A stretch of DNA of 64,000 nt from Selaginella moellendorffii (Eukaryota > Plantae > Lycopodiophyta), in the NCBI RefSeq assembly GCF_000143415.4, contig NW_003314282.1, positions 2,003,374 through 2,067,373 of the forward strand, written 5' to 3'. Of the stretch, positions 25,522 to 55,438 are shown in pieces; position 1 is the stretch's first letter, and every line of letters begins with the position of its first letter. The notes below the pieces were generated by a model. The model had not been told where the DNA came from and searched no databases. It worked only from the letters and a program-made list of their open reading frames with translations. The position numbers were made by a program, and so were the translations under genes.

Positions 25522-25561
25522 AGAGCGCAAAACCCTAGCTTGACCTATAGCACAGGGGCGC

Positions 25562-25952: not shown

Positions 25953-26047
25953 ATCTCTCTTGCTGTACTTTTTAGTTGGCCAGGCGCCGATGAATCAAAC
26001 CCACTTCACTCGCCTCTCTTAAGTCTAGGCTAGCTAAGTAGGGTTTC

Positions 26048-31643: not shown

Positions 31644-31696
31644 GCCTTCTCACTTTCTAGGGCTTGGACATTTTGCCCTAGCTAGCCCCCGTAAAG

Positions 31697-34600
31697 ATGA
31701 AGAACAACAACGAGAGCACCAGTGGCATTGCAGGAGCGCGCACCTCGCATTTCACCATCAAATACAAGGCTTATGGGAATCAGCCGCCGCCTCCCAGCGT
31801 CAAGGTATTTTTCCCCGCGCACCTGTAACTTGTAACTTACGCTCCTCTCTTCTTCGTCTCCCCAGAAGCGCCCCAGCCAACACATTCGAGAAGCGCTGGA
31901 TCCGCCTCTTGCTCAGCGAGATGGAGTTATCCGTCCAAAGCCCTGCATTGTCAACAAGCACAACTTTGCCGAGCAGCGCCACCAAGTAAGCACCAGCGGG
32001 CGAATCCTTTTTCTTCAGTCTGGAAACTCTTGCTAGATCGTCTCCTCGATACCGGAAGACGAGCCACTGTTCCAGCCCTTCCCACCGGAGGTGGTTTTTA
32101 CTGGTTACCATGCCTTCAAGAAATATACCACTGTTCTTCAGCTGCGTAACAATGATAAGGTACTTACTTACACCCCGCTTTCTCTTCTTCTTACTGTTTT
32201 TTTTAATCAGGTGGTGCGAAGAGTCCAGTTGTTGTCCGAGGATCCCCTCCTGACAGTAGAGTTGCTGCAAAGTGGGGATCAGGCTGTCTACTCGGAGATT
32301 GGTTCCAGCAAAGTGGCGTGCGGGATGGAGGTATTCCACAAACTCTTCTCTTCGTCCTGCATCTTTCATTTCGTTGTTAAACAGGTCTCCTACACAATAG
32401 CTTTCGTCCCGGAAAGTGATGGGGACTACATGTCGGAGCTTCTGGCCGTGACTGACAGAGAGAAGTTTGTGATTCCTGTCAGATGCGTCGGCTTGAAACG
32501 TAAGGCATTCAATCAACTGGTCTTGCCTCTATTTTGTTTGTGTTCGCAGCCATGGTGGACGTTCCAGATGAGATCATTTTTCCTCCCACACCTGCAAAAT
32601 GTTCCTATAAAAAGGTTTGCTCCCACTTTCACGCGTAGATGCTCACAAGGAATCGTTTTTGAGTGTAGAACGTTATGATACATAATGTGGGAAAGAAGAA
32701 GGCTGTTTTCCGACTCAGGACAAGCGAGTTTTTCAGGGTCTCACCACCCACACATAACCTTGATCCGGGAGAATTCTTTCAGTGCTGCGTCTATTTTTTC
32801 CCTCGGCGAGTATGCACTTATGAAGGAGAGCTAGAAGTTACCTTCAAGGAGAATGGCGACCAGCTTGTCTCGCGGCTAATTGGAGCTGGCACGGAGGTCT
32901 GTTCTGTTCAATTTTCTAGTGGCCGCCGCGACTTACCGTGCTGTGTTTTGGGCAGTTAAACGTTGGCCTCTCCACAGGTGTGATCGCAGCATCTACGACG
33001 TATATCAGGCGAACTTCGCATGTCACTTTTCAAGTTTTCAACAACTCCTCTTCTCTCGCTTATTTCTTGTGGCCCAAGTACGTCCATTGTTTGAAAACAA
33101 CATTTATAAAGGTGATAAAGAGGGGCTTCGAGAGCTGCGGTCATCTATAATACTTTTCTCGTAGGTTTGCTTCTAAAGAAGAACTGGACGAATACGTTCA
33201 GCAGGTTGGAGACTATGCAAGGGATCTACCGCCACCAGATGCAGTTGTCACGTCGGAGGATGAGCTTCTGTCGTCCAGTATAGATAAGGTACCTTTACGC
33301 TTATGTCTTTGCACTAATTCTTACTGCATTCCTGTTTCAAGGCAGGCGTTTACCATAACACCAGCCAAAGGCGAAGTATGGCCTGGGACGCTTGTGGAGA
33401 TCACGGTGACCTTTTGTCCTCCGAAACCTCTACGGTGAATTGCAGCTAATCTGCAATGGCTTTATTTTACTCATGCCGATCTTGCAGGTACTTGAGCACA
33501 ACGTATTGCCTTATCTCAGGAAAATCAGATGCAGTACCGCTGCAGCTACAAGGGCTAGGCGTGGGTCCGCTCGCACAGTTTTCGCCCTGTGAGCTTGATC
33601 TGGGAGAGCTCTGTTTATATTCCGTCAACAAGTTCAGTGTTGCTCTTGAGAACCTTGGGGAGCTGGATGTAAGATCTTGTCTTTGTAACGCGAATTAAAG
33701 CTGATAAAATCACGTGCAGGCTCACTTTAGGCTGATGGAGGCACTGTCATCTCCTATGATAACCTTTACCTTTGAGCCCGATACCGGGACCGTTGAGCCT
33801 AATGACGTTTTGGCAATTACAGTCAAAGTTTGTGGCAGCCTCATGGGAACTTTCAGCGAAAAGTTTTTGTGGGAAGTTACAGACTCAATCCACACGCTGT
33901 CACTGGCATTCAGAGGAAGTATTATTCGGCCCTCATTTTCTGTCGACACGACTGAACTAGACTTCGGTCCTCTTTCGTACGGTTTGCTTTCCGTAAGGTA
34001 CGTTACTGTGACCAACAGCAGTCCGGTTTCTTTACCTTTCCAGTTCCGGGTTCTACAACCTGAGAGTGGGTCACAAGAGTTCACAGTGACGCCATGTTAT
34101 TTTATACTGGGGCCTGAGGTGTGCATTTTTATTTACTTTCTTCTTTTGTTACTGTTCTTTTCTTCGTGCAGGAAAAGAAAATCGTTTCTATTGAATTGGT
34201 TCCATGGGAGGAGAGAAGATATGCCACGGTGATAAGCCTAGATATACCCAAAGTTGGCAAAGATTTTGCAACGATTCCTGTGCAAGCAAGATGTTTAGCT
34301 CCAACGGTGAGAAGTCTGCGTCTTGTCATGTTTTGACAAGCTCGCCGCAGGTCACTATATCATGCGATTGCTTGGATTATGGAACGTGCTTTCTGCGTTA
34401 TGGCTACACCAAAACATTGAGCTTGATAAACGATTCCCTGGTGCCCGCGAGATATGAAATCCAAGCACAAGAAAAGGAAACGGAGAATCTTGCTATCTTG
34501 CGGCTGAAAGCTGAGAGTGGTTTTATAGAGCCTGGCTCGAGCTTACCGCTGGAGTTTACACTATCAACTGTGGCTCTTGGTGACGTTAGTCTTTCTGCAA

Positions 34601-37600
34601 TCGTCAGCATATCCGGGAAAGAGTATACTCATTATCTAATCAAAGTCCTGGCAACCTCGGTTGGGCCCATAATTAAGATTGAAAAACCAATTAGCAAAAA
34701 GCTCCATTCAGCACGGCAGCAGACAGAAGAGGCAGATACCGAGTGGGTACCTGCTCTTGATTTTGGGAAGGTTCAGGTTCTCAGAGATCACCATCTCAGT
34801 GTGGTCTTAAGAAATGCGTGTTGTATTCGTGCACCGCTCAAGATTTCTCTTGGGAAAAAGGATTCCATGTACCACTTGAATCTGAGCGACGTGCCTCTGG
34901 ACCCTTTTGAAGCTGTGGAGTTGAAGGTAACTTGTTGCATATGACATTTCTACTACTTAATCCCCTATGACAGGTTCGGGCCTATATGGATGATGCAGGC
35001 AAATTCAATGACAAGGTGACAATACTTTTCGAAGGTGGCGAGTTGTTCATTCCGCTGTCGGCTGTAGGAGTTGGCTCGACTTTAGTTTGCAAAGAGTTTC
35101 AAGAAGGTTTTGTTCACTTTGGTGATCAATTCACGCTACGGCATTTCTCCTACACCATTGAGGTACAAAACATGGGCAGAAAGCCACAGACGCTGGCTTG
35201 GGATAACGACACCACCAGGAAGCAAAGGGCTATCAACAAATCCTTGGCAATGGAGGCAGCTGACCAGAAAAAATCGGGCAACAAAAAGGCCGCTCTGGTC
35301 GTCCCAGAACCTGTACCCGTCTTTACGATCACACCCGACAAGACAGTCATCAAGCAATACTCGCCGTTCTCGCTCACTGTCTCAGGATACACCACAAATC
35401 CAGGCCATATCCAAGAGGACTTTACGTGCAAAGTCACCAGCGCAAAAGACATGTACTACCTCAAGATTTCGGTGGATGCGGACATGGCCGCATTGACACT
35501 CGTATTTTCTGAGACTACGCTGACTTTTGTTCAGAACAATGGTTGGGGAAAGGACGGTCCTCACGAGCTCAGCAGGACCTTGACTTGTGAGAACGTTTCC
35601 AAGTTGCCTCTTACGTTCTCCCTAGCAGTAAAGCCTCCTTTTTCAATCAACCAGGCGGAATGGACTCTACGAGCGGGTGGCTCCGGCAGTGTTGTGGTCT
35701 CACTTGAGAAGCAAGACATTGCAGAAAGGCACAGCACTGTGCTTTATGGTAAATTGGATATCCTCTACACGGGTACCTTGGAAAGGAACGGTATCGATTT
35801 GATAGCACATATCAACTATCCCAACCTCTCTGTGAACCAGAGCAGTCTGGATTTCGGGTAAGCATTATTGCTCTTCCACTGTTCGATTAAACATGTGCTG
35901 TCCGCTAGGTGCATCTTGGAGTTAACATACACGAGGATGCACATTGAGCTCAAAAACTCGAGCGCCCTTGACGTGTGGTACAGCTGGATGCTTGATGACG
36001 GGTATGGTGACGGTATTCATGTCTCTCAAAATATACTCCAGGATAGCGGGGGCCTCAAAATTCCTACAAATTACATTTTTGATATTCTTCCTGTGAGAGG
36101 GTACCTTGAACCAGGGGAGCAAGAAACAGTGGAGGTGTCTTACTATGGGCATTGTGGATATCAATGTCAAGTGTCGGCTATATGCGAGGTATTTTTCCAT
36201 GGGCTGCAACGTTTTGCTGACGTGAGTTGAGTCCAGGTGAAAGGCGGCCCGGACTACATTGTCGCATTAAGCGCCGAGTCAGGAACCATCGCGCATGCTC
36301 TCAGTCGCGTGGCTCTAGATTATAATGTCCAGCCTTTCAATAAGGCCTCAACCAAAGAGTTTACGTTATCAAATCCAGGGAAGGTACCATTTAAGTTTGC
36401 GATCGATTTGGGCGTTTTGAAAGGGGATGTTCTAAGAGAAGTGACTCCCATGACTGGCCTGTTGGGACCAGGTACAAAGCAGAAGTTTGCTGCATCTGTT
36501 TATCCTGGACTTCCTGAAAAGTTTATGGACAGTTTCACCATTCAGGTCTGTATCTTTTTGCTGAGCTTCATGCAGCTAAACATGCTTGACAGGTTGCACA
36601 TTTCGTACCCACTACTATATCTATTCTAGGCTCTGGCGCCTTTCCTCATATCCTTCTGGATACAACCCGCGTTAGAAGCCACAAATATTTGAGCTTGGCA
36701 GCGGAAGCGTTTCATAATGCGTATATGGCCATGAAGACTACTCCAGTAGTTTCTGCCCGTTCCAATTCGGTCAGAATGTCTACAACCGCTATAAATGACC
36801 AGCAAGGACCACCTCTAGTGGAAGCTGAACATCCTGGAGGCGAGCAAGTGTCAGTCGTGAGGGAAGTCGGTACAGCTCCGACTACGACGGGAACTGTAGG
36901 AGACGAATGGGTGCTGGAAACAGTAAGTTTCAAACAATTAAGTTGTTGCTTTGTTTTTTATTTTCCTCCTTTCCGTTACAGACAGGAAACGAGGTGCTGT
37001 CTTTTGGATCGGAGGTTTTACGTGCACCTTCAATCGACCAAGTGGATTCTGAGATTGACCGTCTTCTTTTCAAGGAACACCTCATTCATGAAAACAAAGA
37101 GACTCTGGATATAAATAAGTTTGTCTTGAACACGCATATTTGCGACTTCGAGAACGTGACACTTGGTGAAACAACGCAGAAGACTGTGAAGGTTACAAAT
37201 GACGGGCCTTTGCCAGTGACGTTCAAAATAAACATGGCAACTGTCAAAGCCAAAGGCATCACGTTGGATCCCGATCGCCTGATAACGCTACCCCCGGACT
37301 CTCCAAAGAGTTCAATGGATTTGGTCTTCAAAATGCGAACGGACTTGCCTAGATTTCCAGCTGGCCCACTTGAGTGCTCCGTGCCACTTTTCATTAAAGA
37401 GGTAAGCCATCCTGGGTCACCGAGAGTGTCATGGCTCTTGTCAAACGTGCAGGGCCCTCAACTGGTGTTGGCATTCACGGCGCATGTAAGCAAACCTGTT
37501 CTGGAGGTATCCCATGAACACCTTGACTTCGGCGCGGTTCAGTTTGGCCAGTGTAAAGTAAGCACGGATCACTTATCTTCTAAGCTGACGAACTTGTGAC

Positions 37601-40600
37601 TGCTACAGATTTTGTATCTCCGGCTCTTCAGTAGAGGCGAAGTGCCTTGCATCTGGACTGCAGCTAAACCGGATCTAGGCAGCTGTGATATTCACGACTC
37701 TACCGCTTTCACCTGTGAGCCGGAGACGGGAGTGATTGAGGCCCACAAATATGTCGATCTAAAGGTTTGTGTACAAGGTTTCTTCCTGTTCAACAAAAAT
37801 CTTAGCTTTTCTATGTCTGGCCAGGTCCAGTTTATTCCCACGCAAAAGAAGAAGGCGTACTTTGCCGTTTTTTTTATTGATCTGCTGCACAACCCAGTCG
37901 AGCTTAAATTCGCGTGCAGAGGTCACAGCTACGTGCCAATATTTACACTCGAGCCATCGATTATTCAGCTCGGACCAATACTTCCGAACGCTCCTGAAGC
38001 CGCTGAGATCAAATACGTGATCTACAACAACGCTGAAGAGCCAGTGGAGCTTTACTCACTTGCGTTTGATCCAGACTATGTGAAAGAGGAAGAGATTCTC
38101 AAGACGGTGGAAGGCTACAATGAGCGTGATCAACTGTTCCTTGAGCGCCGCAGTGCTGGTCAACCTTTCTGGTCCCATCTCAAACCTGGAGGCTCTGCAA
38201 AGCAAGAGGCTTTGCAACAACCACAACCATCTCCGCTTGAGGCAGCAGGAAAGGCAGGCAAAAGTCCATCTGGTTCTGCTCCAGATGTCTCTGAAAAGCC
38301 TTTGGTTTCCCATGCCAAGAAACTCCTGATTATGCTACTTGGACCTCCAGCGGTTGGCAAGTCGACACAGGCAAAGCAGCTGAGTCGGAGATTCAGTTGC
38401 CCAGTCGTGGCTATGGATGACATGGTCGCTTTAACTCGCAGAAACCGGATGTCCTCCACGGCAGACGGAAGCAGTGGCACCCAGGCGTCCGGGAGTTCTA
38501 CGGCATCTGTGGAAATCAACGACTTCGAAAAGGATCTGATAGCAACACTGAGGAGGAACCTTGAGAGCTCCGAGTGCATCTACGGAGCTGTGTTTGATGG
38601 ACTCAATTCCCACTACACGACGACTGTCTCGCTCGCCAAATGCATCCTCTATGCTGCCGGACTGGAACCATATGATCCAGAGAATCCTCAAGACGACGGG
38701 AAGAAAAAAGGTGGCGGTGAAAAAAAGAAGGCTCCTGCACCTCCCAAAGGTAAGAAGGCAGAGGAAGAACCTACGGGGCCTCCTATCTTTCCCAAGACGT
38801 TCTGGAAGGGCGAGGCTACAGTATACGCAATAACTTTGAAGGCTCAAAGAAGTGAACTATCGAGCCACTACCAAACTGTTCCCGACCGTGACCAGTGCAA
38901 GAAGAAGGTTTACGTGGAAACAGCGGCAAAAGAAAGTCAGGAAACGGAACCTGCTGGGGAGCCGCCACCGCCACCTGCGTCCGAGCCAGAAACCCCAACC
39001 TTTGCATCGGAAGTCCTGAACCATCTCAAGTATTATCCATATGTGTCTCTATTTCCCAGTGAGGAAGAGCTTGATAAGTACTATGCATCGGAGACAGACG
39101 TACAAAACCTTTTGGGTGGAGCCAAGGCTGAAAGTCATGAAGAAGGAGCAGGGACTAATAGAGTGGCTTGCGTTGCTATCAATGCACTTCAGAACGTGGG
39201 GCTTGTTTATGAGGAGGAGCTCCATTTTCTTCCAGACATGGAAAATGTAGCACCGCTTCCACCTGCAGAGGTGCTTCAAGTGGTGAAGCGACCGCACAGG
39301 CGATCGAGTTTCATCAGTGATCCCAGCAGCCTTAAGTTCGCCTTTTTCACCAGCATGGCGGGTGAAGAGGAGGACAGCTCGGGGGATCCCACGGCGCAAG
39401 GAAAGAAGAGCAAAGGGGGAGCAGAGAAAGCGGCAGGCTTGCAGAGCGAGAAGTACCAAATCATGCTCAAGAGGAAGACCGAATATTTCACTCCGCTGGA
39501 GGCGCTGCCAGAGGGGCACGAGATGCGGACACGATGGGTGGTGAAACCGCAGCAACGCGTGGAGCTGCTGTTGCGCTTCTGGTCTCAGACCGTGGGGGAG
39601 TTCGAGCAAAAGTTTGTGTTTGAAGGCCTCAACGGTAACCATCAAGCCCGTCTTATGTGCAAAGGAGTGTGTGCTGAACCACAGATTGGTTGCTTTTATC
39701 GACACATTAAACTTCCCAACACAAAGGTGACGCCCACGCAGAAGCTCCAGAAGGCGTTGTTTGTGTCGGACAGGATTCTAGACTTCGGTCCCCTTCCAAC
39801 CGGAAGAACAGCCGACGGTTTTCCGAATCTGCCAGACTCGGAGCACTGCAAGAGGCTCGAGATTCGTAACATCGGCCTCTTCGACCTGCATGTCGACTTT
39901 GACGTTGGTGAAGGCAGCGAGGCACCTGGTGCTGGTGGTGCTGCAGGCAAGAAGCCGGCTGCCAAGGGTGGCAAGCCACTCTTTATGCTCAATCCCCTCG
40001 GAATGGATCTGAAAATCAACGACAAGCAGATGCTGAGTATCTACTGCTACCCGCCTCAGGTATGACACGAGCTTCTGCTGTTCTTTTTTCCTGAGTTTCT
40101 CGGACATGCAGGGACTACTTGGCCCACTGGAAGGAAGAATGGTGTGCAGGATCAGGGATAATCCTCAGCCTCTGGAATGCAAGGTGATTTGCCTCGCAGA
40201 CACCCCTCGGGTAGACGTTGACTGCAAGGACCTGGTGTTTGAGCGCCTCTTGCTCGACCGTGAAGTGAAGAAATCCATCACCATAAGGCATGCAGCCATT
40301 TTATGTTTCCCGCTGCTGACACTTCTGTTGTAATCTCCAGAAATATATCTGCGTTGCTTCTTTTCTGGAACGTTGTCGGGCTGGAAAATGAACCGCCCGA
40401 GCTTGCGTTCTCGGAGACATCCGGTAGCTTGTGTGCCTTGGGCAGTGCGACAGTTGAGGTCACGTTCAAGGCGATCCAGGAGAAGGTGTTCAGCCAGAAG
40501 TTGAAGCTCCAGGTTAGGGTGGCCGATTTCATCACCCGCTGTCGTGAAATGACACCCAAGATATGTGGTGCAGGTTTTCGAGGCGAAAGACGCCGTCAAA

Positions 40601-43600: not shown

Positions 43601-46600
43601 CGTCTTCCCCCGTCCCTTCCGGTGCATGACGCGGCGCGGCCTCATCCCAGGCGGCAAGAGGTTTGAGATGGGATTCGAGTACACCCCGATGAGGCTGGAG
43701 CTGCACGAGAGCTTCTGGACCCTCCGCATCCCGGACAAGAGGATCGAGGTCAACTTCCTCCTGGTTGGCAACGTCAAGAAGCCCGAGCTGTCGCTCAGCT
43801 GCTCCCACGTCGACTTTGGCCAGGTCCTCGTCAAGGCCAGAGTGAAGCAGACCATCTACCTGCACAACCCCGAGCCTGGGCCCTTCGCCTTCAACTTCGA
43901 CAAGCTCAGCTACTCGCCGTCGCAGCCGGGCCAGGTTGCGGTGCTCACCTTCACTCCCTCGAGTGGCATTGTGGCCCAAGGTGCAACCATACCGGTGGAG
44001 CTGCTCTTCTCGCCGGCGCTGGAAGGCGACCACTCGTTCGACATCGTGTGCAACCTCCGCATGGCCTCCCCGCTCTTCATGTCTGTCAAGGCGGAGGCCT
44101 ACCTCTACCACGAGAAGCTCTACCTGGAAGGCGGGGACGACGGCAGGCCGCTCGCCCTCGTGGCAAAGGAGGCCTTCAGGCTAGACTACGGGCGGGTGAT
44201 GATCAACTCGAGGGTGTACCGAAAGTTCATCCTCACCAACTCGGGCAAAGCGGCCTTTCACTTCATGTGGGGCTGTGGCAGCGACAGCGCCCTGCTGCGA
44301 GCGGAGCCAGTCGCCGAGCTGGTGACCAAGGATGAGCAGCTCACCTGCGACCTCCTCTTTCACCCCACCGCAGAGAGGACATTTGTGGACCTTCCCATCG
44401 TATGCCAGATTATGCACGGCAACAAGTACCTCATCCATCTCAACGCCACCTGCTACCGCCCCAGGATCAAGTTCAGCTTCCACGACTTTGACTTTGGAGC
44501 CCGCTTCCTGCACCAGCCCGGCTTGACACCGCCCTCCACGGACCTCACGCTCTCCAACGAGGGTGACGAGGTGATCACCTGCGAGCTCCTGTACGAGAAC
44601 ACCTCCTTTCTGGAAGTGGAGTACGTCAACATGAGCTTGAGCCCCGGCCAAAACCACACCATCAGGGTGACTTTCAAGCCGGATGCCTTTGTGCTCTACA
44701 GGGAGGCTGTCAAGTTCCAAATATGTGGCCTCGACACTGTGACCATCTCGGTCAGAGGGGAAGGCGTGCCCGTTTTGCTCGAGCTAGTGGATCCCAGGCA
44801 GCGCTACTTGTCGTTTGGGGTGGTCCGGCTGGGGAAGACGGCAAAGCAACACGTTCAGATCACCAACAAGAGCAAAATCCTGGCTCCCATATCCTTTGAG
44901 CCTAGTGCCAACGCACTGGGCAAGCTGGGCATCACATGCCTGCCTGCCCAAGGCATCCAGCTGCCGCCGAGATACACTCGTCCCATGGAGCTCGTCTTCA
45001 CTCCACAAGCCAGGATGACCAAGTTTACCGAAGGCCTTGTGCTGGAAGTGGCGGGGACCCAGTCGAGAGTGCTGACAGTATCTGGCATTTGCCATGCTGT
45101 GGTGGTGAAGCTCAACCAGAGCGTTTTGCCCTTTGACATCGTAACACTGGGCTCCAAGGTGACCAAGAAGATACAGCTCGAAAACCACGGGGACCTGGCA
45201 ACCAACTTTGCGTGGGACACAACCAAGTGTGAGGCGGATTTCACCATCTTCCCCATGGAGGGGTTCCTGACCCCTCGTCAGGTGTCAAAGCTGGACGTGA
45301 CCTTCCATCCTTCGGCCGCTAATCCGGACATGAGAATCGAGGACATCCCTTGCCAAGTGGAGGGCGGCGAGCCACTGCACTTGACGCTCCTGGGGGGTTG
45401 TGTGGAGCAAGGGGCGCCTGCGGAGACGCTCAAGTTCATGACCGCCGTGCGGGCCACCGAGTCCAAGATGATCCAGCTCAAGAACCCGACAACGCAGAAC
45501 TGGCTCGTACATCCCGTCATCTCGCACCCCTATTGGAGTGGAGCGGTGACAGTGCAGGTGCCGGCCAACCAGAGCCTAGGCTACAGCCTCACCTACCGTC
45601 CCCTGACAATGAGCAACACGCACCGGGCCACCATCTCCTTCCCGCTGCCCTTCGGGGGCCTTGTGTCTTATCAGCTGTCGGGTGAGGCAGGGCCGCCACC
45701 TCCCGAGGCCAGCATCAAGCTGGACGCCAAGGCGCGGCTCACGCTCCCCTTCAGCCTGCACGTCCCAAACTGGCTCAAAGCCACTCAGCAGTTTGCCGTC
45801 ATGGTAAGCATGGTGCAGGGGGATGCCACGACAGTGATCAAGGGCCCCAAGACCATCGACGTGCCCGGGCTGTCCAACAAGGAGTGCGTGCTCTACTTCA
45901 AGGCCCATAAGCCTGGAAGCACCATGAGCACCGTCACGTTCAAGAACGAAGAGAGTGGTGAGTACTCGCTGTTCAACGTGACAGTGGAGACAGGCAGGGC
46001 CGACATTGTCGAGTCAGTGCTCCTCGAGTGCTTTGTGAGGCAGCAAGCGTCGCGCACGCTTCGCCTCAGGAATCCGCTGGACAGGCCTGTGGTGTTCAAG
46101 ACGAGCTGCACGGGCCAAGGCGTGGTGCTGCCCGCCCAGGTGCAAGCTGACGCAATGTCCAGCGCGGCAGTGGACGTTGCGTTTCGACCCCTGGTGCAGG
46201 GCAGCAGCCAGTGCAGCCTCAGTCTACACAGCGACGACCTCGGGGAATTCGAATACCAGCTGACGCTCAAGAGTGTGGCAGCGCCATCCGAGGCCCCGTT
46301 GCTCTTCTCCGTGCCCCTGGGCAATCAGCTCGTACAGACTTTCCACTTTAGGCACACACTTCCAGTCAAGGCCACGTACAATTGCCTGCTCTCTCAAGCA
46401 GCCATTGACGGAGGCTTCACGGCCGAACCCAGCATGGTGCAGGCCAATCCAGCACCGCCCGACGGCCTCGACCTCCAAGTCCAAGTCGTGTTCGAGCCGT
46501 CGCGGATCATGGACGAGTTCCAAGGCTTGCTCACGTTGAAATCGCCTGAAGGGTCTGACTTTTGCTGCCAGCTGCTGGCAAGCTGCAGCAGCCCGTCTCC

Positions 46601-46856
46601 TCAGGGTCCCTTCTTCATCAAGGGCAGTGGACAGATCAACTTCAAAAACGTTTACAACGACACCGTCCAGTTTAACTACACCACGGACAATCCAGCTTTT
46701 GTGGTGAGCAAAGGTGAGAAGATGCAGTCCAAGAAGCAGTCTAAGCTGGTTGTTAGCTACAAACCAGAAGCACCGAACGCCCCCAAGACTGGCCGACTCA
46801 CAGTGACTTGCAATGAAACAGATGATGTATGGTCGTTCTACCTGCAAGCTGTCTAG
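31697..46856 (+). CDS. HYDIN: HYDIN, axonemal central-pair apparatus protein (giant, many ASH/Ig-like repeats)
   Basis: N-terminus RPKPCIV...HQ|...PLFQPFPPEVVF.GY....Y...LQLRNNDK. Many ASH-type repeats (LDFG...L.N; F...P..G.L.PG). Adenylate-kinase-like P-loop GPPAVGKST. C-terminal RPWCHFELP.SDY, EFDSLG, NPTN..Y.F.W, ESFW...IP, PQGP, WSFYLQ*. Terminal exon is ~5.9 kb (40935-46856). Confidence 0.93.
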
Positions 46857-47011
46857 AGCTTATATCTATGTAATGCTACAAGCTCTCTTTGGGCTTGCAA
46901 TCCTTGTTATATATGCTACATGCTTTTATTTTAACTAATTTTAAGTTAGGGTCTGGTTTAAAACATTCTTTTTCCTTTACACGCAAATGAAACTTCATAT
47001 CTATTTAGGTC

Positions 47012-48105
47012 ATGGATGTGGCACCTGAAGAGCTTCCTGGACTTTATTCTTGGGTTTGTAGTTGAAGCTGATCTGATAGATCAGCTCAGTGCTGAGAGTT
47101 TTCAGGTTGACGGGATTCCGTTGTCAAGGCCGAAGAGAAACATCGCTCGGGATTTCAGCGATGGAGGTACTGTTTGCTAACATTCCATGTTGGATTAAAA
47201 CGATGTTTTCCGCCAGTATTAGCGGCAGAAGTTGTAGCACATTATTGCCCACGGCTTGTGGATATTCACAATTACAGTGCTGCCAACAGTCTTGCTCAGA
47301 AGATTTACAACTGGAACACTCTCAACAGTAAGCAACTTTCTGGTTATGCACATTTATTTTGTGTGTGCTGCAGACAAGGTTTTTAGACGTTTAAGCTTTT
47401 CCTTAACCAAGGAAGACGTCGAGGCAGTCGCAAATGCTGAAAACCAAATGATCGAAAGAATACTTAAGCTTTTGAAATATAAGGTAAATGTCTTCCGCTC
47501 CAAATTCGGTTTAGAAATTGTCATATTCTGCCAGATTGCCAAGTACAGGCCGATTAAAACAGAGTCAATGAAGCACGAGCCTAACGGTCATGGTATGATG
47601 GAGAAATGATCAAATAAGTAATCACACAGAAACATTGCTTTGGGAGGCTCTAGTCAAAACTCAAATTAGATTTTGTAGGCAACTACCCCATAAAAAGGCC
47701 CCCCCCTAGAATGTTTACACCGCCAAGCAGGTATGAGATTTTCGTCTTTCTTTTTATTGTTATACATGTTTTCTTGCAGGGGTCATGAAAGAGGACTTTC
47801 TGGTGTAAGTGTACAGTCTTTGTACTGGTTCGGTTCTTGATCTGGTTCAGTTGTACAGAGCCCGAAAAGGACAGATTCTCCAGAGAGACAGGAAAAGGAT
47901 GGGATGAATGAATCCCAAAAGGATATTCAACTCCGAGAGCTCCGGGAGACAATCGAGGTAATTAAGATTGTACAGTAACAGAATGATGAAATACTATAAG
48001 CAGTTGTTAGAAGCCAAAGTTATGAAGCTGGAGCAGCTTGTGAGCCTCAAAGACCACAAGATTCAAGTGCTGACAGGAAAGCCATCAAGACCTACACGAC
48101 CCTGA
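47012..48105 (+). CDS. SPEF1: Sperm flagellar protein 1 (SPEF1/CLAMP, CH-like domain plus C-terminal coiled coil)
   Basis: LYSW|VDGIPLSRPKRNIARDFSDG|VLAAEVVAHYCPRLVDIHNYSAANSLAQKIYNWNTLN.KVFRRL and C-terminal LEAKVMKLEQLVSLKDHKIQVL. TGA at 48103-48105. Confidence 0.92.
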
Positions 48106-48699
48106 ACATCTTAGCAGTTTTGTAAGTTGCCATTGCCATATCTACACATAATTTTTGCTAGTTCGGTGTGCCTTGTTCCTCGCTGCATTGTAGTTGAGCT
48201 TGAATGACATCACGTATTGATGTGCCATATTGTTCCTTAATTCATGCACTCCCAAGGGTTTGTTCTCTCATGGCCTTCAAGTGGGGATTTGTTAATCTGG
48301 AGGGATCCACAAGTATGCCATCTTGCTGGACGCGGCGTTTGAAGGCACATGTCGAGGGATCTCCATGCAAGAGAAGCAATGAAAAGGAATTGCTTACCAG
48401 ACAGATGACGGTACATTTTAAAAAAAAACTCTTGATTCCGACCACCCTTGCTGCCACGCTGCAGCCACGGCTTTTCGCTATATGAGTGACATAAGACAGA
48501 ACTCTGTTGATTGCTGGTATCAGAATCTGCCCAAAGTCCCTCCAGAAATTAGCAATAAAAATATGTTAAATAGAGGGAGCCAACAACAGTCTAGAACCTA
48601 CACCTTAAAGAAAATGCTTTATCTAGGTTTCAAGAGAATCTTTGGCCATGTGGTCAACGTGGGTCAAAAGTCAACTCAAAAGCTTGGACTATAAAATAT

Positions 48700-51200
48700 A
48701 ATTGTCTGGTGTAATATAGTATGGAAAGTTAATTCTCTATATCTTTCTTGTTTACTGGGGAGTCATAATATTAGTATTAAAGATGCTGGTTGTAATAGTA
48801 ACTAAGATGAATGTTGAAATCCTAATGTCAATGGAAGTGTTGACAGTGGTGCCAATAGAGGTGCTGAGGTGCTGAGGTTCTCTTATAAAACTTTGATATT
48901 TTAAGCAAGGGAAAATGGCACTTGGGGATTATATTAAAAAGCTTACATATTTGATTAACCATGTTCTAATGAAAAATCTGAATCAGAATAAGTCATACTT
49001 CATTAATAGCCTTCAAAGTGAGAGCATCAAAAAGTACTTGTGTCATTCCCAAAGTTTGGAGGAGCTCTTTGATGTGGTTTCAACTTTAAAATGATACAAT
49101 AATAGAAATAAATATCACAAGCTGAATTTAATATGAAAGGATCAAAGAGCAAAAGGTTTTTGTGAAAAATTATAGGCAAGGTTGTCATCATTGCAGTGGG
49201 CTTGGACACTAAAAGTTTGATTGTCCACAGCTGAAAAACAAGCAGCAGGGCAAAAGGAATGGTCAATCTTCTAATGACAGTAAGTTTAATACTAACAAGT
49301 TGTAAAATTTGTAACATAAAGATAACAAAGTGGAGTATTATAGTTGGAGGAAGCAGCTCCTGATCATTGTTCATCAACTCAACTAAGAAAAGGTTAAATA
49401 CACTTGTGATCAGCTTAAATGTGGGAAGCATGTTTCATGGAGGTTTAATATGGATTCTACTGGACAATGGAGCAATATGACCTTGTGTGTGGTGGCTCCA
49501 GTAAGCGAATTGCAGTATAATGGATTGCCTGTAGCAAACAATAACAAAGGTTTGGTGACAATGGCTCCAGAAATTTAACAGGTCCAAATGAGAGGGAATC
49601 CGTGTCAGCATTCTTGAGTTCAGTTTATTGAAAGAAGGCAAAAGGGTTTATGAAAGAAAAGTTCCAGGTTTCAGTATTTAGATCTGTTCTTCTTTAAAAG
49701 CTATTCTTACCTCTTGTATTACACATAAATTTGTCTATTTGCCCCCTATCAATCTGGCAACCATCCTGGCAAACACATTGCTCATAATTTATCTGGTGGC
49801 ATATCAATCCAGTCACTCCCAATTTTACAGAGAATAGTATGTTCAAGGTTAACTACAAAAGTACACAAAGAAGAGTGACAGAGTACAGAAGATCAGCAAT
49901 TTAAAGCACAAGAAAGGAAACGGCTTGGATTTGGTTCTTGAAATTGCATAGTTTATAAGCACTTTCTGCTATGGAGCATTGTGGCACATAGTTTTCAAAG
50001 TTTTATAAAATTAATTTTAAATAGTTCAATTTTCATTATATAAATTTAAATTATATCCTTTAACAAATGCTATTTGAAATACAATATACTCAAAAAATAT
50101 GAGTGCTTGATTGGGAAAAACAATAATAGCATCATGAGCCTAAGCATGCTCAACAAACTACATAAACTTGTTGACCATTTTACTCATGGTGATAAAACCA
50201 TGTCCATAACTCTGTTACATGATGAATATGCAATAAAGCATCCACTACCACATTTAATTTCCCTGGACAATTCTTGAAAGGAAACTCCTTAAACTCCATT
50301 AATTTGACCATCTAATGAGTTTGCCTAGTGTTCAACTCCTTATGTGTGAATAAATATATAAGAGGTTTGTGAACTGTCAACACCACAAACACTACACTAT
50401 AATAAAAATAGTGCCACCATGTCCACAAGGCATGAACAATTGAAAGTAGTTTTATTTCATATATGGAATATTGTTGCTCCGCAAGATTCAAAGTCAGATT
50501 TTTATATGCAATAAGCTGTCCTCTTGTAGCTCTTTTCATTAGAATGGCACATGCTTATGTAAATACCATATCAAAACAATAATCACCTTCACAAAGTTGG
50601 GTAGTAATAAATAAGCATACCAAGGAAACTGCTTAACTCAGCCACTGAAGTTGGTGTAGGCCAGCTCACCACCACAGTCATCTTGCTTGAATCTATCTTA
50701 ACACTTAAATTTTGTGATATTCTTCTCTTCCCAAAACTTCTATCTTGGTAGGTTTTCAAGTAGAGGAGCACGAGGTCTCACCATTGCGAGTTTACTATCT
50801 TTTATTACTAAGGGCGACTTTAGTAATGGAAACTAGAATGTCTTAGATGCTGAATCTATAAGAATGGCCTAGAACAGCAAGAAATTTGGTACATAAAGAC
50901 AAGGAAAAGGATAGAAATGCCAGGAAGAGAAAAGGAAAGAAAATCAGTGGTTAGTTAGCTCTTTTCCATGAACTTAGAGGTTGAGATTCAGGAGAACATC
51001 TGAGTATATAACCGTCCTTTGAAGAAGTGAACTAACCTTTTGAGCACTGGGGAACACAAGCCTTCCTTGGGTGTACTTGTTCCAATGTGGAAAGTAAGCT
51101 AGAAAGATTTTTGGCTTCTTGTGTGAAGCTTAGAACCTATGAAACACAAGCTAACATTGATTCAAACAAGAGAAAACACTCCCGGCCATCGTCTAATCAT
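48700..51200 (-). mobile_element. Degenerate Ty3/gypsy LTR-retrotransposon pol remnant; boundaries approximate
   Basis: Minus-strand fragments VVSWPTPTSVAELSSFLGMLIYY (RT connection, 50589-50771) and LAEQQYSIYEIKLLSIVHAL..W.HY....F.V.T.HKPL.YL...KELN.RQ (RNase H, 50312-50539). Many stops, AT-rich. Confidence 0.75.
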
Positions 51201-51960
51201 TAAGCAGGCCTGTACATGCAAATACACATGTGATCAATACATAAGGAGAGTAAGATCAATCCGACGAGCTGGTTTCTCTGCCAGTTTTCCATCCCTTAAT
51301 TCAGCTGTTCTTTGTCAGGTCATGCAAACATTTACTTGCAAAAGGTGTTCGAAGAGGCTAGCTGTCTTTTGCCCTCCGTGGTTTGTTAAGAACTCTCTGT
51401 TTGGAAGGACAAACCCTTAATCCACGTGGTATAAAATCCATGATGACATCTCTTCGCCGTTAACCTCAAAAAAGTAACTCACTTTAAAACAATATACTCC
51501 ACAGAAAAGTTTACTTTTGGCGCCCCTGATGTTATAGTACATCGTTGTAGCGGGTTCCTTTAGCCGCGGATATGCCCGTTTGGAGCTTTGACCGATGACC
51601 TGGCAGGGTGGGACATGGGGCACGGCAAGCGGTTGTGACCAGGAATGGGGACCACGTAGACGAATGTTTAGGGTTCTTGGCGAAAGCGAGTCTTGGCAGG
51701 TCGGGCATGGATTTTAAGGAGGTTGGAGGGCGAAGGGTGGAGGGATGATTGAAGAGCAAGAAGTGTAAGGCTGGTTTTGGAGCTCATTTGAGTTTCTGTA
51801 AGCCCTTTTCTGTATCCATGGACCTCGCTTGGGCATACGTCCAACGTTAAACCGCTACATTGTTCGGCTGTTTACTAAACTATCTCTTTCTAATCCACTG
51901 TGCATTTACCCAATTTGAGCATGCATAAGAAAACTATTTTGGGTAATAAGATTTTATTCT

Positions 51961-53551
51961 TCAGCAAATATTTATGTTGTTTCTGTTTCTATCGTGTAAG
52001 GGACCGCATGAATTTCTTTTGTCCTTGTCCTGCCATAAACACATATAGCTTCTGTGAATATAATGAAAAGTAGAGTGAACCTCAGTTGGAGATAAACTTG
52101 CATATGCAAGCCTGTCACATGCTAGTCTTAGCTCAGACTTTGCCATTGTTTTTGTGGACCACTGTTTGCGGTTAAGATGCCTTCCTGAATTTGTCCTTGA
52201 TTGTGGTGTCAGTAGTTCGATATTTGATGATCTAGGAGGAGGCCCTGGCACCATAATTCTCACTCTTTTATGGCCAGAAACGTTTAGTTCAATGCTTTCT
52301 TCCTCCAGTTTTACATTAGCATCTTGAGCATGTAAAACTAATTAGCCATCCAATAGTCTAAGCGACTTACCAAAACGTGGTGTAGAAGTGTCACAATCGG
52401 GCCTTGTCACCTTACCAAGCAAAGTACGCAATTTCCGTTGCTTCTCTAGGTGCTCTGTACGTTCGAGCTCTCTCTCCAACTCTTTGACTTTCTGCAGGCA
52501 CAAAATGAGGTAAACTCGACTCCACTCTTCCACCAGCTTACCTTTTTCATCAAGGCCCGCGACTGAGCAGCCTGGCCTCTCAAAAAGACCCGTCGTTTAA
52601 GCATATTAGTAGCATCGGATTGCATTGCTTTTTGAAATAGCAGAGACTGTGTCTGGGCAGATGCAGCCTTCCAAGCATTCAGTCTCTCTGGCTGAGGGTT
52701 TGGAAATGGCAAAGCGTGAAAAAATGTAAACTTGTATGTGCTTGGCTTGAAAGGGTTTGCCACACCTGCAGCTAAAAGGGTGTGAATGTTATCACTATAA
52801 ATAAATTAATGGCATACCAATGTTCATTTCGCCATGGTTTGGGTTTTTCGACCGTGAAGAATGCCTTGCGAACCTAACGATGCTTCTTTCTAAGCAGGCG
52901 GCAACTTCCTTAATCTTTTTTCTCTTATTTGCAATCCTCAGGATTTCTTGTAAATTTTCCATCCTATCATTCTCCTTTCCCAATATCAGGTGTTAGCAAT
53001 AAGTTTGAATTCCTGTCAAGAAAAAAAAACCTTTTGCAGTGCTTTCATAAACCTGTGACGCGCAACAGCTCTGGCCTCTTCAGCGTACTTTTGCAGGAAA
53101 TTAACATTTTTCATCTGTAAGGAGCAACTCGTGAGGGTGATAATAATGCGTATAAGTACTCACTTTGTCCAACATAAGTACAGCAGCTGCTCTATGGCCA
53201 TCACCAACGTTATTCAGCGCACATATGCATCTGTTTTCGAGTTCTTTCAGACGATAGTTATGATTTTGCTCCCAATCTTCCTGCAAGGTGGAATCAAGGA
53301 CAGATCGGTTGAAACTACGAGTACCTTCAGCTGGGTGAAGAATGCTTTTAAGTTCTCTTGCCTCCTCTGCAGATACCATTGTACTTCCTGTGATGAAAAC
53401 TGGCGTTCCTGGTCCCGCACCTGAAGGACGCACAATCTTTGTCTACCAAAATCGCATCAAACGTAACCTGCATCATTCGGGCTTTCCTCATCTTCTGCCG
53501 GCAGGATCGCAAATCAGATTCCTGCTGCTCTTTGGTCATGCGATATGCCAT
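51961..53551 (-). CDS. Putative CEP295/Ana1/DDC8 N-terminal-domain protein (centriolar), multi-exon; 3' end uncertain
   Basis: Hand splicing at GT-AG sites (exon1 53551-53468, exon2 53420-53325, exon3 from 53280) gives MAYRMTKEQQESDLRSCRQKMRKARMMQ|VRDQERQFS...QLK|EDWEQ...LKELENRCICALNNVGDGHRAA...ARHRFMKALQK, and later NAWKAA...VFLRGQAA...KELERELERTE. This follows the remembered CEP295 pattern RRRKLRLLQVREQER...AEWE...LASLRSMGEGHRQA...RHKEAL...DARLAA...AHVRG...KELKQL. Confidence 0.68.
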
Positions 53552-53974
53552 GATGCCACTGTTCTTGAAATGGACTCTGACTACCCAAGAATTGCTTCCA
53601 AGAATATTCTTTATCATAATCTTGCAAACAATAAAATAGTTTTTTAATCTGTGCTTCACTAGCAGCCTAGCAACAATTTATATTACAATCTTATGAGAAA
53701 CCTGACACGATGGCGACAGACTGCTGCTAATACCAGAAGAAAACCGATTTAAGGCGTCTTTGAATTTTTGAATCGGCGTTTGGAACTCTTCCACAGCTTT
53801 GTTCTATTTTCTCTTTCACAAATATCTAGAAGTTCAGGGTTTGAGCTTTTCTGCAAAAAGCCCAGCATGTGGAGTTTACATATGCAATATACATAAATGT
53901 CATGCACAAATAAACAATATCGCGACCAGTCCTTTTTTATTAACTGCCAAATAGGGTTTTGCAGTCAAGCGGCA

Positions 53975-55438
53975 ATGGAAGTGCTAGGTTCTAAGCAGGA
54001 CAAATCTGCTGCCATGAGTTCCAAAGTCATGGTACGCACAGCCGCTGGCAGCAAGTAGAAATTCTAGTTATGTGTTTTAGGCATTGCTGCGAAAGCTGTC
54101 AATTGACACTTGGCTTAGAGCGCATGGAAAATCTGTACGCCCTGAGTTGACGAAAAAGCAAAAGCAGGAGCTGAAAGAATGTTTTGAGCTGATTGATTTA
54201 GAAGGATCAGGTGGCAAGTCTTTTCCCATTTTAATGGCTGTTGAGGAACATTTGCAGGTGCCATTGACGGTTGTGAGCTCATGGCAGCATTTAATGTTTT
54301 AGGAATGCATGTGACTAGGTCCGAAATAGATAGGCTTTTGGACGAGGTGGACGAAGCCAAATGTGGTGAGGTTCGAACTTCTTTTGCTTTTTCCGGGTAG
54401 AACCTTGATAGTTTTTGTCCAGGTTGAGTATCCTGACTTTGTTCGTATTATGAAGTCCAAGCTCGAAACCCAATCTGAAGACTCTAATGATGAAGATTGT
54501 AAAAACACAACTTTACTCCTTTCCTAGAGTATCAATGTTGTTCCTTCTAATTTAGCGAAGCTCAAAGGCCAACAGCTTCCATTCCAGCTTCTTGCACGCG
54601 CATATCGGCGCAAGAAGGTTTGAGTAAATTAATTAAATTACATTTTGCCTATTTTTAATTTTCAGCTTATCGAGGCAGTGATGATTGGCGATAAAACTGC
54701 TCAAGAACGCTTGAGAGCAAAAGCTCTTGAAGCTGAAGCAGAACACCTGTCTGTGCTGGCTGCTATGGAAGCAGAAAGACAAAATCCGGTCTGTTTGGAA
54801 TTTTCATCTATTAGAGATTTGCTTTTTAGTTGCCCCAGACTTTGGCTTATGACGAAAAGGACTTGCGGACAATGTCTGACATCAACTACCAGGTTGGTAG
54901 CATATATGAAGATGACTGTTCTCTTATCTTTGGCATACAGAAACTGAGGCAGGCTCAAGTTCGAGACAAGCACATCAGTACGCTTTGATCTTCGTTCAGG
55001 TAGCTAGTTACCTCTGCATCAGTTGCAGATCGCTCGTTTCCAAGCTACGTTGTGGATAGCCTTGACGAAGATGTAAAGAAAATACTCTATGGAGTTCAGG
55101 AAAACGAAATTCCAGCTGCCACTGACGAAGACAGCTTGTTTGCGGGTAATGATACATATTAGTCAAAAACTGAAATGCATAATGGTTCAGCTGTTTTCAT
55201 ACAACCCGGGCAAGAGATAAAGCCTATCAGTTTGAGCAAGCAGATAAAAGACTCTTACAAGACAGAGCTAGCAGATGTCAGTCAGCGCCATTGCAAGGTT
55301 GGGCATTTGACTTTATTTTTCTAAAGGTAGAGTAAAGTAAAAACACAGGTTCGGCATAAGCCCGTGCTTGAGCAGCAGATGATTCACCTGAAGGCACTCA
55401 AGTCTTTGCAAGAAGCTCAACAAAGAAAAAGTTTGTAA
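53975..55438 (+). CDS. Centrin-like protein with a single EF-hand pair and a novel C-terminal region, multi-exon
   Basis: ELTKKQKQELKECFELIDLEGS|GAIDGCELMAAFNVLGM..TRSEIDRLLDEVDEAKCGE|VEYPDFVRIMKSK resembles the centrin N-lobe. It continues LPFQLLARAYRRKK|LIEAV and helical segments. TAA at 55436-55438. Confidence 0.75.

What the first reader, a model, noticed from the sequence alone, without database searches (positions are those of the whole stretch)
31697..55438. Four consecutive cilium/centriole genes: candidate sperm motile-apparatus gene cluster in a land plant
Seen: HYDIN(+), SPEF1(+, 155 bp downstream), a CEP295-N-like gene(-) and a centrin-like EF-hand gene(+) follow one another, interrupted only by a decayed retroelement and unresolved exon-like fragments. 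Established: HYDIN and SPEF1 are both central-pair apparatus factors, CEP295/Ana1 and centrins are centriole/basal-body proteins, and in plants with flagellated sperm these structures form only during spermatogenesis. Inference: these unrelated, non-paralogous genes form a co-regulated spermatogenesis neighbourhood, like plant biosynthetic gene clusters but for an organelle. Ciliary genes are a small minority of a plant genome, so four in a row is not expected by chance.
Basis: partly seen in the sequence, partly recalled or inferred. Interest (0 to 1): 0.85.

Follow-up and report, generated by a model that had tools for sequence, protein, structure and literature searches.

The report
Four sperm-flagellum genes side by side
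In the spikemoss Selaginella moellendorffii, four unrelated genes of the kind that build the sperm flagellum and its basal body lie next to each other in 24 kb; this is unlikely by chance, but the grouping is not shared with the other plants checked and shared regulation has not been shown.

Summary
The window is Selaginella moellendorffii scaffold GL377586.1. It carries, in order:
- HYDIN (31697-46856, +);
- SPEF1 (47012-48105, +), whose ATG lies 155 bp after the HYDIN stop;
- a decayed retroelement;
- a 400-aa gene with a CEP295NL/DDC8-like N-terminal domain (51989-53551, -);
- head-to-head with it, 423 bp away, a gene with one centrin-like EF-hand pair (53975-55438, +).

The EF-hand gene belongs to an uncharacterised family. 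Its named hits were all green-lineage species, nearly all with flagellate cells, Ginkgo included. No flowering plant or conifer was among the 120 hits listed.

With 200-500 ciliary genes among about 22,000, fewer than 0.006 runs of four are expected genome-wide. The genes upstream are ordinary.

Co-regulation is not shown:
- No sperm-stage RNA exists. Three RNA runs gave 0-5 reads on the HYDIN 3' end and none on SPEF1 or the 3' part of the CEP295NL gene.
- The three promoter spacers hold no DUO1 site and share no motif.
- The EF-hand gene is a Selaginella-specific duplicate. Its relatives in Marchantia, Sphagnum and Ceratodon have ordinary neighbours.
- HYDIN is not next to SPEF1 in Haematococcus or Phytophthora.

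This scan flagged similar flagellar-gene groupings elsewhere in the same genome, so a genome-wide test is the next step.

The parts
31697..46856 (+). HYDIN, the central-pair C2b projection protein. Many exons; the last exon is a 1951-aa ORF at 41001-46856.
Evidence: Pfam ASH, HYDIN_VesB_CFA65-like_Ig and Ig_CFAP65 hits. Best database hits are HYDIN, with Ginkgo at 45% identity. The C-terminus is colinear with other HYDINs. The first ASH-type exon lies near 32.1 kb.
46857..47011 (.). 155-bp AT-rich spacer (GC 0.31) between the HYDIN stop and the SPEF1 ATG. It must hold the end of the HYDIN transcript and the start of the SPEF1 transcript.
   Evidence: Sequence. No RRCSGTT site.
47012..48105 (+). 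SPEF1 (CLAMP), a central-pair microtubule-binding protein of about 200 aa in about 8 short exons. Exons 1-5 are 47012-47053, 47106-47166, 47217-47327, 47374-47483 and 47535-47592. The last exon is 48004-48105. The exons between are uncertain.
   Evidence: Manual GT-AG model. CH_2 matches colinearly across exons 2-4. The only solved-structure matches are SPEF1 chains.
50312..50539 (-). RNase H fragment of a decayed LTR retroelement within the AT-rich stretch from 48.2 to 51.9 kb.
   Evidence: Pfam RT_RNaseH, E 9e-14.
51989..53551 (-). CEP295NL/DDC8-like-domain gene, SELMODRAFT_413867, 400 aa. The N-terminal domain lies in exons 53551-53468, 53420-53325, 53280-53164 and 53114-53031.
   Evidence: GenBank model with PF28375:CEP295NL. 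Atlas scores 0.86 for the whole protein and 0.92 for residues 1-135. My exon model agrees.
53552..53974 (.). 423-bp spacer between the two divergent ATGs; a putative bidirectional promoter.
   Evidence: Sequence. The pair is kept at 97% identity in the second haplotype.
53975..55438 (+). Gene with one centrin-like EF-hand pair, SELMODRAFT_413868. It belongs to a family with the motifs WLRxHGKxVRP, an EF-hand pair, LPFxLLAxAYRRKKL and a C-terminal HKPVxExQxLHL.
   Evidence: Proteins and alignment. EF-hand_7, E 9e-12. Homologues end at the HKPV motif, which matches the stop at 55436-55438; the GenBank model runs on to 56300.

Best explanation
This is a real grouping of four unrelated genes for the motile apparatus of the sperm, and it is specific to the Selaginella lineage. 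It has two compact units. The first is HYDIN followed 155 bp later by SPEF1, both central-pair proteins. The second is a CEP295NL-domain gene and a centrin-like EF-hand gene, set head to head on a 423-bp spacer; both are basal-body or centriole-type genes.

Shown: the identity and order of the genes, the spacings, that neither of the latter two genes is represented in 19 transcriptome-like runs of ordinary material, and that the grouping is absent from the other species checked.

Inferred:
- All four genes are switched on only in spermatogenous cells.
- The very short shared spacers couple the members of each pair, through a bidirectional promoter in one case and tandem genes in one open chromatin patch in the other.
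- The grouping arose by rearrangement and duplication in a compacting genome. It has been kept, or at least tolerated, because the genes share one narrow expression window.
For: - Gene identities.
- The EF-hand family's named hits were all green-lineage species, nearly all with flagellate cells (Chara, Mesostigma, Cymbomonas, Volvocales, mosses, liverworts, lycophytes, ferns, Ginkgo); the trebouxiophytes (Chlorella and relatives) are the group whose flagellate stage is uncertain. No angiosperm or conifer is among the 120 hits listed.
- The DDC8-like domain gives human Cep295 its centriolar localisation (PMC5007451).
- Upstream genes are ordinary: cullin, kinesin-5, ketoacyl synthase. GenBank has no gene model for 10 kb downstream of the EF-hand gene.
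- Expected runs of four by chance: 0.0001-0.006.
- 19 transcriptome-like runs hold none of the 51.9-55.5 kb stretch.
- In three RNA runs SPEF1 and the 3' part of the CEP295NL gene had no reads, and the HYDIN 3' end had 0-5.
- The head-to-head pair is kept in the second haplotype.
- Earlier notes of this scan report other tight flagellar-gene groups in the same genome. I did not check these.
Against: - There is no positive expression evidence at all, so co-expression is an inference.
- No DUO1 motif (RRCSGTT) lies in the three promoter regions; the window holds 26 sites against 46 expected.
- The spacers share no k-mers beyond chance.
- The EF-hand gene is one of two Selaginella-specific duplicates. 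Its relatives in Marchantia, Sphagnum and Ceratodon have non-ciliary neighbours.
- HYDIN lacks a SPEF1 neighbour in Haematococcus and Phytophthora.
- No homologue of the CEP295NL-domain protein was found outside Selaginella, and its function is unknown.
- The ciliary status of two of the four genes is indirect, and the chance estimate depends on it.
Confidence: 0.5

Rival explanations
1. Chance neighbours. In a compact genome with one gene every 4-5 kb, some functionally related genes end up adjacent. Here the adjacency has no regulatory meaning, and each gene has its own promoter.
For: - The grouping is not conserved in any other species checked.
- No shared motif or DUO1 site.
- A 3.9-kb stretch with retroelement debris separates the two pairs.
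- Two of the four 'ciliary' labels are indirect. If only three genes count, up to 0.25 runs of three are expected.
Against: Four in a row is expected fewer than 0.006 times per genome, even with 500 ciliary genes. The spacers of 155 and 423 bp leave little room for independent control. Other such groups are reported in this genome by unchecked notes.
Confidence: 0.3
2. Passive co-location. Genes that are silent in almost all tissues collect in gene-poor, transposon-rich regions near scaffold ends. Sperm genes therefore lie together without any selection for a cluster.
For: - The block lies about 35-50 kb from the end of a 2.1-Mb scaffold.
- It is followed by AT-rich, repeat-like sequence and a transposase fragment.
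- It holds a retroelement fragment.
- The second haplotype has an unrelated 6-kb insertion at the corresponding place.
Against: Directly upstream lie ordinary, probably broadly expressed genes in GC-rich, gene-dense sequence. This idea does not explain why all four silent genes are of one functional class.
Confidence: 0.15
3. HYDIN and SPEF1 are one fused gene, as in the GenBank model of 4796 aa that carries a CH_2 domain.
For: The GenBank model spans both genes and ends at window 51748. The spacer is only 155 bp.
Against: - The HYDIN reading frame stops exactly at the C-terminus conserved from oomycetes to Ginkgo, with the ending ...W-x-[FY]-Y-L.
- SPEF1 has its own ATG. Its N-terminus aligns from position 5 of the CH_2 profile.
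- The model's last exon is an unrelated stray ORF ending at 51748.
Confidence: 0.05

Closest known systems
Local clusters of co-expressed, non-homologous genes in animals, such as the testis- and sperm-biased gene neighbourhoods of Drosophila (see PMC3129673)
   Same: Unrelated genes with one narrow, male-germline use lie adjacent. As in Drosophila, the gene order is not conserved between lineages.
   Different: Co-expression has not been measured here. The group is small (four genes). All four belong to one organelle system rather than merely sharing a tissue. Nothing of this kind turned up for plant cilium genes in my paper searches.
Plant biosynthetic (metabolic) gene clusters, delineated by shared chromatin marks (PMC4797310)
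   Same: Adjacent non-paralogous genes serve one end product. They are lineage-specific, and joint chromatin control is a plausible mechanism.
   Different: The products here are structural and organelle-assembly proteins, not the enzymes of one pathway. No co-expression or chromatin data exist. There is no signature enzyme.
Bidirectional-promoter gene pairs
   Same: The CEP295NL-domain gene and the EF-hand gene diverge from a 423-bp spacer that is kept in both haplotypes.
   Different: Promoter activity and co-expression are untested. The pairing is absent from the bryophyte relatives checked.
Other flagellar-gene groupings flagged by this scan in the same genome (s1-346866, followed up; s1-368799, s1-421715, s1-374888 and s1-433275, first-reader notes only)
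   Same: Unrelated flagellar or basal-body genes about 100-400 bp apart in Selaginella moellendorffii. The one that was followed up was also absent from other plants and not shown to be co-regulated.
   Different: The genes and the scaffold differ. I verified none of these loci myself.
CEP295/Ana1 and CEP295NL (DDC8) of animals
   Same: They share the N-terminal DDC8-like/CEP295NL domain (PF28375).
   Different: The Selaginella protein has 400 aa and lacks the PICA and ALMS motifs of CEP295. It resembles the short CEP295NL form. No homologue from another plant was retrieved.
Centrin/caltractin
   Same: The EF-hand pair is most similar to the N-lobe of centrin.
   Different: There is only one EF-hand pair. 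The family has its own conserved N-terminal, AYRRKKL and C-terminal HKPV motifs. No solved structure matches beyond the EF-hands.

Membership tests
HYDIN | Long array of ASH/MSP/PapD-like Ig domains | tested here: met
   Ig_CFAP65_4th (E 3e-65), HYDIN_VesB_CFA65-like_Ig (E 1e-51) and ASH (E 5e-31), spread over several exons.
HYDIN | Colinear with known HYDINs up to the conserved C-terminus | tested here: met
   the 1951-aa last exon aligns over residues 1-1951 to the C-terminal ends of HYDIN from Ginkgo (45% identity), Haematococcus, Phytophthora and Biomphalaria.
HYDIN | Central P-loop / adenylate-kinase-like region | tested here: inconclusive
   AAA_33 and ADK hits on exon 37612-40065 at E 1e-4 to 2e-3, below Pfam's cut-offs.
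SPEF1 (CLAMP) | N-terminal CH_2 calponin-homology-like domain in a small protein of about 200 aa | tested here: met
   CH_2 profile positions 5-95 of 96 are covered colinearly by exons 2-4, 90 bits summed; the only solved-structure matches are SPEF1 chains (E 3e-14); about 200 aa with a coiled-coil-like last exon.
SPEF1 (CLAMP) | Located on the central-pair microtubules | not testable with these tools
   Needs localisation in sperm.
CEP295/Ana1 | N-terminal DDC8-like (CEP295NL, PF28375) domain | tested here: met
   precomputed Pfam 38 hit in the class E<=1e-5. Atlas score 0.92, with 176-187 shared features. The Pfam copy I could run myself returned no CEP295NL hit, probably because it predates the model, so this rests on precomputed and language-model evidence.
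CEP295/Ana1 | C-terminal PICA motif and ALMS motif; protein longer than 1500 aa | tested here: not met
   The protein has 400 aa. No ALMS_motif or other C-terminal family hit. It is therefore a CEP295NL-type short protein, not a CEP295 orthologue.
Centrin | Four EF-hands in two lobes; about 170 aa | tested here: not met
   a single EF-hand pair (profile positions 27-113). The rest of the 300+ aa protein matches no EF-hand.
Cilium-associated by species distribution (EF-hand family) | Present in lineages with flagellate cells, absent from those without | tested here: met
   named hits only from green algae, Chara, Mesostigma, bryophytes, lycophytes, ferns and Ginkgo; none from angiosperms or conifers among the 120 listed. 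Limit: only the 8000 candidates sharing most words were scored.
Co-regulated gene cluster (operon-like or neighbourhood) | Three or more adjacent non-homologous genes of one function | tested here: met
Co-regulated gene cluster (operon-like or neighbourhood) | Members are co-expressed | tested here: inconclusive
   close to silent in all runs available. No sperm-stage RNA exists (also stated in bioRxiv 10.1101/2021.07.25.453666).
Co-regulated gene cluster (operon-like or neighbourhood) | Shared cis-element (DUO1 site RRCSGTT, PMC6290024) | tested here: not met
   no site in 30850-31700, 46857-47011 or 53552-53974; no shared k-mers.
Co-regulated gene cluster (operon-like or neighbourhood) | Adjacency conserved in related lineages | tested here: not met
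   Marchantia, Sphagnum, Ceratodon; Haematococcus, Phytophthora. Other lycophytes and HYDIN/SPEF1 in bryophytes could not be fetched.

The most novel reading that the evidence does not exclude
Selaginella moellendorffii has gathered its sperm-apparatus genes (flagellum, basal body, gamete surface) into many small, tight groups with spacers of 100-400 bp across the genome. This block would be one of them. The groups would be switched on together as chromatin domains, or by read-through or bidirectional transcription, during the brief burst of spermatogenesis. That would be an organelle-level counterpart of metabolic gene clusters, not described in any plant.
Probability: 0.25. Interest if true: 0.75.

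Novelty: new variant of a known kind. Interest (0 to 1): 0.5.

Why it matters
If the grouping is functional, it would be a first case in plants of structural genes for one organelle being clustered, and a handle on how land-plant sperm genes are controlled. That question is open beyond the transcription factor DUO1.

It also yields two concrete candidate sperm basal-body proteins:
- a plant protein with the centriole-targeting DDC8-like domain of CEP295;
- an uncharacterised centrin-like family kept almost only in green-lineage species with flagellate cells, Ginkgo included.

It corrects three GenBank models. If the grouping is only chance, the finding is still a useful annotation of four sperm genes.

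Tried and rejected
- DUO1-site scan (RRCSGTT): none in the three promoter regions; the motif is depleted in the window as a whole.
- Shared 6-10-mers among the three spacers: at or below the shuffle expectation.
- RNA evidence: three RNA-seq runs gave 5, 0 and 2 reads on the HYDIN 3' end and none elsewhere in 46.7-52.7 kb. No joints were seen, so the runs neither support nor test co-expression or a HYDIN-SPEF1 fusion. Run X1 holds 21% of the words of 51.9-55.5 kb but nothing of the stretch I laid.
- Homologue search with the CEP295NL-domain protein: only the second Selaginella haplotype. The Pfam copy I could run returned no CEP295NL hit.
- Rfam: nothing in the window.
- The upstream kinesin is kinesin-5/KIF11, not a ciliary kinesin.
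- The Adiantum HYDIN locus is uninformative. The model is truncated and the introns are large, so the true 3' end lies outside the fetched DNA.
- Look-ups for the Physcomitrium, Marchantia Tak-1 and Diphasiastrum EF-hand proteins found no recorded gene.
- Spliced proteins from my own exon models have no reference, so I did not hand them to search tools. As a result, whole-protein searches for SPEF1 homologues, and HYDIN-SPEF1 synteny in bryophytes, were left out.
- To retrieve the annotated proteins I searched with a two-row alignment of one exon each from the CEP295NL and EF-hand genes.
- No structure or complex prediction was run, because no binding claim is made.
Full report
**Source of the window.** Exact look-ups identify it as Selaginella moellendorffii, GenBank assembly GCA_000143415.2, scaffold GL377586.1 (2.10 Mb). 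The finding lies about 35-50 kb from the scaffold end.

**HYDIN.**
- ORFs between 33.7 and 46.86 kb on the plus strand carry strong Pfam hits to the Ig-like domains that make up HYDIN: Ig_CFAP65_4th (E 3e-65), HYDIN_VesB_CFA65-like_Ig (E 1e-51) and ASH (E 5e-31).
- An exon near 32.1 kb encodes the typical first ASH domain.
- The last exon is a single 1951-aa ORF (41001-46856). Its best database hits are HYDIN proteins, with Ginkgo at 45% identity over the whole length.
- The ORF ends ...WSFYLQAV. This aligns to the very last residues of HYDIN from Ginkgo, Haematococcus, Phytophthora and a snail. TAG 46854-46856 is therefore the natural stop.

**SPEF1.**
- An ATG at 47012 opens a small gene with short GT-AG introns of about 50 bp.
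- Exons 2, 3 and 4 match Pfam CH_2 colinearly at profile positions 5-24, 26-60 and 62-95 of 96, for 90 bits in total.
- Exon 3 alone matches only SPEF1 chains among all solved structures (E 3e-14).
- The last exon encodes the usual C-terminal coiled-coil-like tail and stops at 48105.
- GenBank joins HYDIN, SPEF1 and a stray ORF ending at 51748 into one 4796-aa model that carries a CH_2 domain. Given the conserved HYDIN stop and SPEF1's own start, I read this model as a chimera.

**The gap.** From 48.2 to 51.9 kb the sequence is AT-rich and holds an RT_RNaseH fragment on the minus strand (50312-50539, E 9e-14). GenBank has no separate gene model there; only the chimeric HYDIN-SPEF1 model's stray exons fall in this stretch.

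**How the next two proteins were retrieved.**
- Neither gene gave a Pfam family hit exon by exon.
- Spliced proteins have no reference and may not be typed into the tools.
- I therefore searched the representative library with a two-row alignment of one exon from each gene. This returned the deposited proteins.

**The CEP295NL-domain gene.**
- SELMODRAFT_413867 (P0057, 400 aa) lies at 51989-53551 on the minus strand. SELMODRAFT_404784 (P0017) is its copy on the second haplotype.
- The deposited models agree with my manual exon models.
- The protein has a precomputed Pfam 38 hit to PF28375 CEP295NL, in the class E<=1e-5.
- The protein language-model search puts its first 135 residues nearest to chordate CEP295 and CEP295NL clusters, with score 0.92 and 176-187 shared features. 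The whole protein scores 0.86.
- In human cells the DDC8-like domain is what brings Cep295 to the centriole (Tsuchiya et al. 2016, PMC5007451).
- The Selaginella protein is short and lacks the PICA and ALMS motifs. It is a CEP295NL-type protein, not a CEP295 orthologue.
- A word-based homologue search found nothing outside Selaginella.

**The EF-hand gene.**
- SELMODRAFT_413868 (P0018) starts at 53975, 423 bp from the ATG of the CEP295NL-domain gene on the other strand.
- It has one EF-hand pair (EF-hand_7, E 9e-12). That pair is closest to the N-lobe of centrin/caltractin.
- It belongs to a conserved but uncharacterised family with four shared features: WLRxHGKxVRP, the EF-hand pair, LPFxLLAxAYRRKKL, and a C-terminal HKPVxExQxLHL motif.
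- A profile search found named members only in green algae (Cymbomonas, Pycnococcus, Volvocales, Haematococcus, Dunaliella, trebouxiophytes), Mesostigma, Chara, mosses, liverworts, lycophytes, ferns and Ginkgo. No angiosperm or conifer is among the 120 hits listed. This is the distribution expected of a cilium or basal-body protein.
- No solved structure matches beyond the EF-hands.
- Homologues end just after the HKPV motif.

**Surroundings.**
- Upstream of HYDIN lie ordinary genes: a cullin (11-13 kb), a kinesin-5/KIF11-type motor (16.7-17.8 kb, minus strand), a beta-ketoacyl synthase (20-22 kb) and a large gene without a Pfam hit (25.5-30.8 kb).
- Downstream of the EF-hand gene GenBank has no gene model for 10 kb, only AT-rich and repeat-like sequence.
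- The run is therefore exactly four genes.

**Chance.** With 22,285 genes and 200, 300 or 500 ciliary genes placed at random, the expected numbers per genome are 2-11 adjacent pairs, 0.02-0.25 triples and 0.0001-0.006 quadruples. The gene counts are my assumptions. A run of four is thus unexpected. The estimate depends on counting both lesser-known genes as ciliary.

**Co-regulation.**
- The literature states that sperm-stage RNA-seq for Selaginella is insufficient (bioRxiv 10.1101/2021.07.25.453666).
- Nineteen transcriptome-like runs from at least nine studies hold none of the sampled words of 51.9-55.5 kb.
- I laid three RNA-seq runs on 46701-52700, reading about 12% of each. They gave 5, 0 and 2 reads on the HYDIN 3' end and nothing on SPEF1 or the 3' part of the CEP295NL gene.
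- This fits a narrow, sperm-specific expression but does not test joint expression.
- The DUO1 consensus RRCSGTT (Higo et al. 2018, PMC6290024) is absent from the region upstream of HYDIN, the 155-bp spacer and the 423-bp spacer. It is under-represented in the window, at 26 sites against 46 expected.
- The three regions share no k-mers beyond chance.

**Conservation.**
- A maximum-likelihood tree places the window's EF-hand gene and the paralogue SELMODRAFT_407440 in a Selaginella-only clade (support 99/97). The gene in the cluster is therefore a lineage-specific duplicate.
- The related genes in Marchantia, Sphagnum and Ceratodon have non-ciliary neighbours within 10 kb. tblastn finds no HYDIN, SPEF1 or CEP295NL-like sequence there.
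- HYDIN is not followed by SPEF1 in Haematococcus or Phytophthora.
- The Adiantum locus is uninformative.
- The second Selaginella haplotype keeps the head-to-head pair at 97% identity. It has about 6 kb of unrelated, gap-containing sequence where the window has 44-50 kb, so the full block could not be confirmed there within the DNA fetched.

**Reading.**
- The physical grouping is real and probably not random.
- It consists of two very compact units, whose spacers leave little room for independent control.
- I take it as a Selaginella-lineage neighbourhood of sperm-apparatus genes. Joint control is plausible but unproven (confidence 0.5).
- Pure chance (0.3) and passive collection of silent genes in a transposon-rich scaffold end (0.15) remain open.
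- A true HYDIN-SPEF1 fusion is unlikely (0.05).

**Earlier notes of this scan.**
- The scan reports other tight groups of flagellar or gamete genes in the same genome. One was followed up and reached the same conclusion as here.
- I also saw that the paralogous EF-hand gene lies 1.7 kb from a GEX2 gene.
- Together these make a genome-wide clustering test worthwhile. That test, and sperm-stage RNA, would decide the matter.

Noticed in passing
window 31697-51748: The GenBank gene model (4796 aa) fuses HYDIN, SPEF1 and a stray ORF ending at 51748. HYDIN's own stop at 46854-46856 sits at the conserved family C-terminus, so the model is a chimera.
   Followed up: yes
window 55439-56300: The GenBank EF-hand model SELMODRAFT_413868 (465 aa) runs about 150 aa past the family's conserved C-terminal HKPV motif. 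Homologues end at the stop at 55436-55438. The extra exon (ORF 55941-56300) has no Pfam hit.
   Followed up: partly
L003:1558-11726 (Selaginella scaffold GL377572.1): The paralogous EF-hand gene SELMODRAFT_407440 lies 1.7 kb downstream of an 1810-aa GEX2 gene (Ig_GEX2_N, Filamin; a gamete-expressed family), with one epimerase gene between them. An unannotated 214-aa gene starts 35 bp after it.
   Followed up: no
L008:1-6172 (second haplotype, GL377568.1): The second haplotype matches the window from 50087 onward at 95-97% identity. Upstream of that it has about 6 kb of unrelated sequence with two 100-N gaps in place of the SPEF1/HYDIN end. This may be an insertion or an assembly join.
   Followed up: partly
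window 46728 and 46751: All RNA reads on the HYDIN 3' end (runs X2 and X4) show T>C at both places. This is most likely the other allele or strain rather than RNA editing.
   Followed up: no
window 52700-55500: Run X1 (kind unknown, only about 4 Mb of contigs) holds 21% of the sampled words of 51.9-55.5 kb but nothing of 46.7-52.7 kb. It may hold transcripts of the head-to-head pair.
   Followed up: no
window 651-1268: An ORF with a cyclic-nucleotide-binding domain (E 3e-13) lies at the window start. It is 30 kb from the block, with ordinary genes between.
   Followed up: no
window 25500-30800: A large multi-exon plus-strand gene directly upstream of HYDIN has no Pfam hit on any ORF tested. 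Its identity was not resolved.
   Followed up: partly
whole window: The DUO1 consensus RRCSGTT occurs 26 times against 46 +/- 7 expected from shuffles, so the motif is depleted overall.
   Followed up: no
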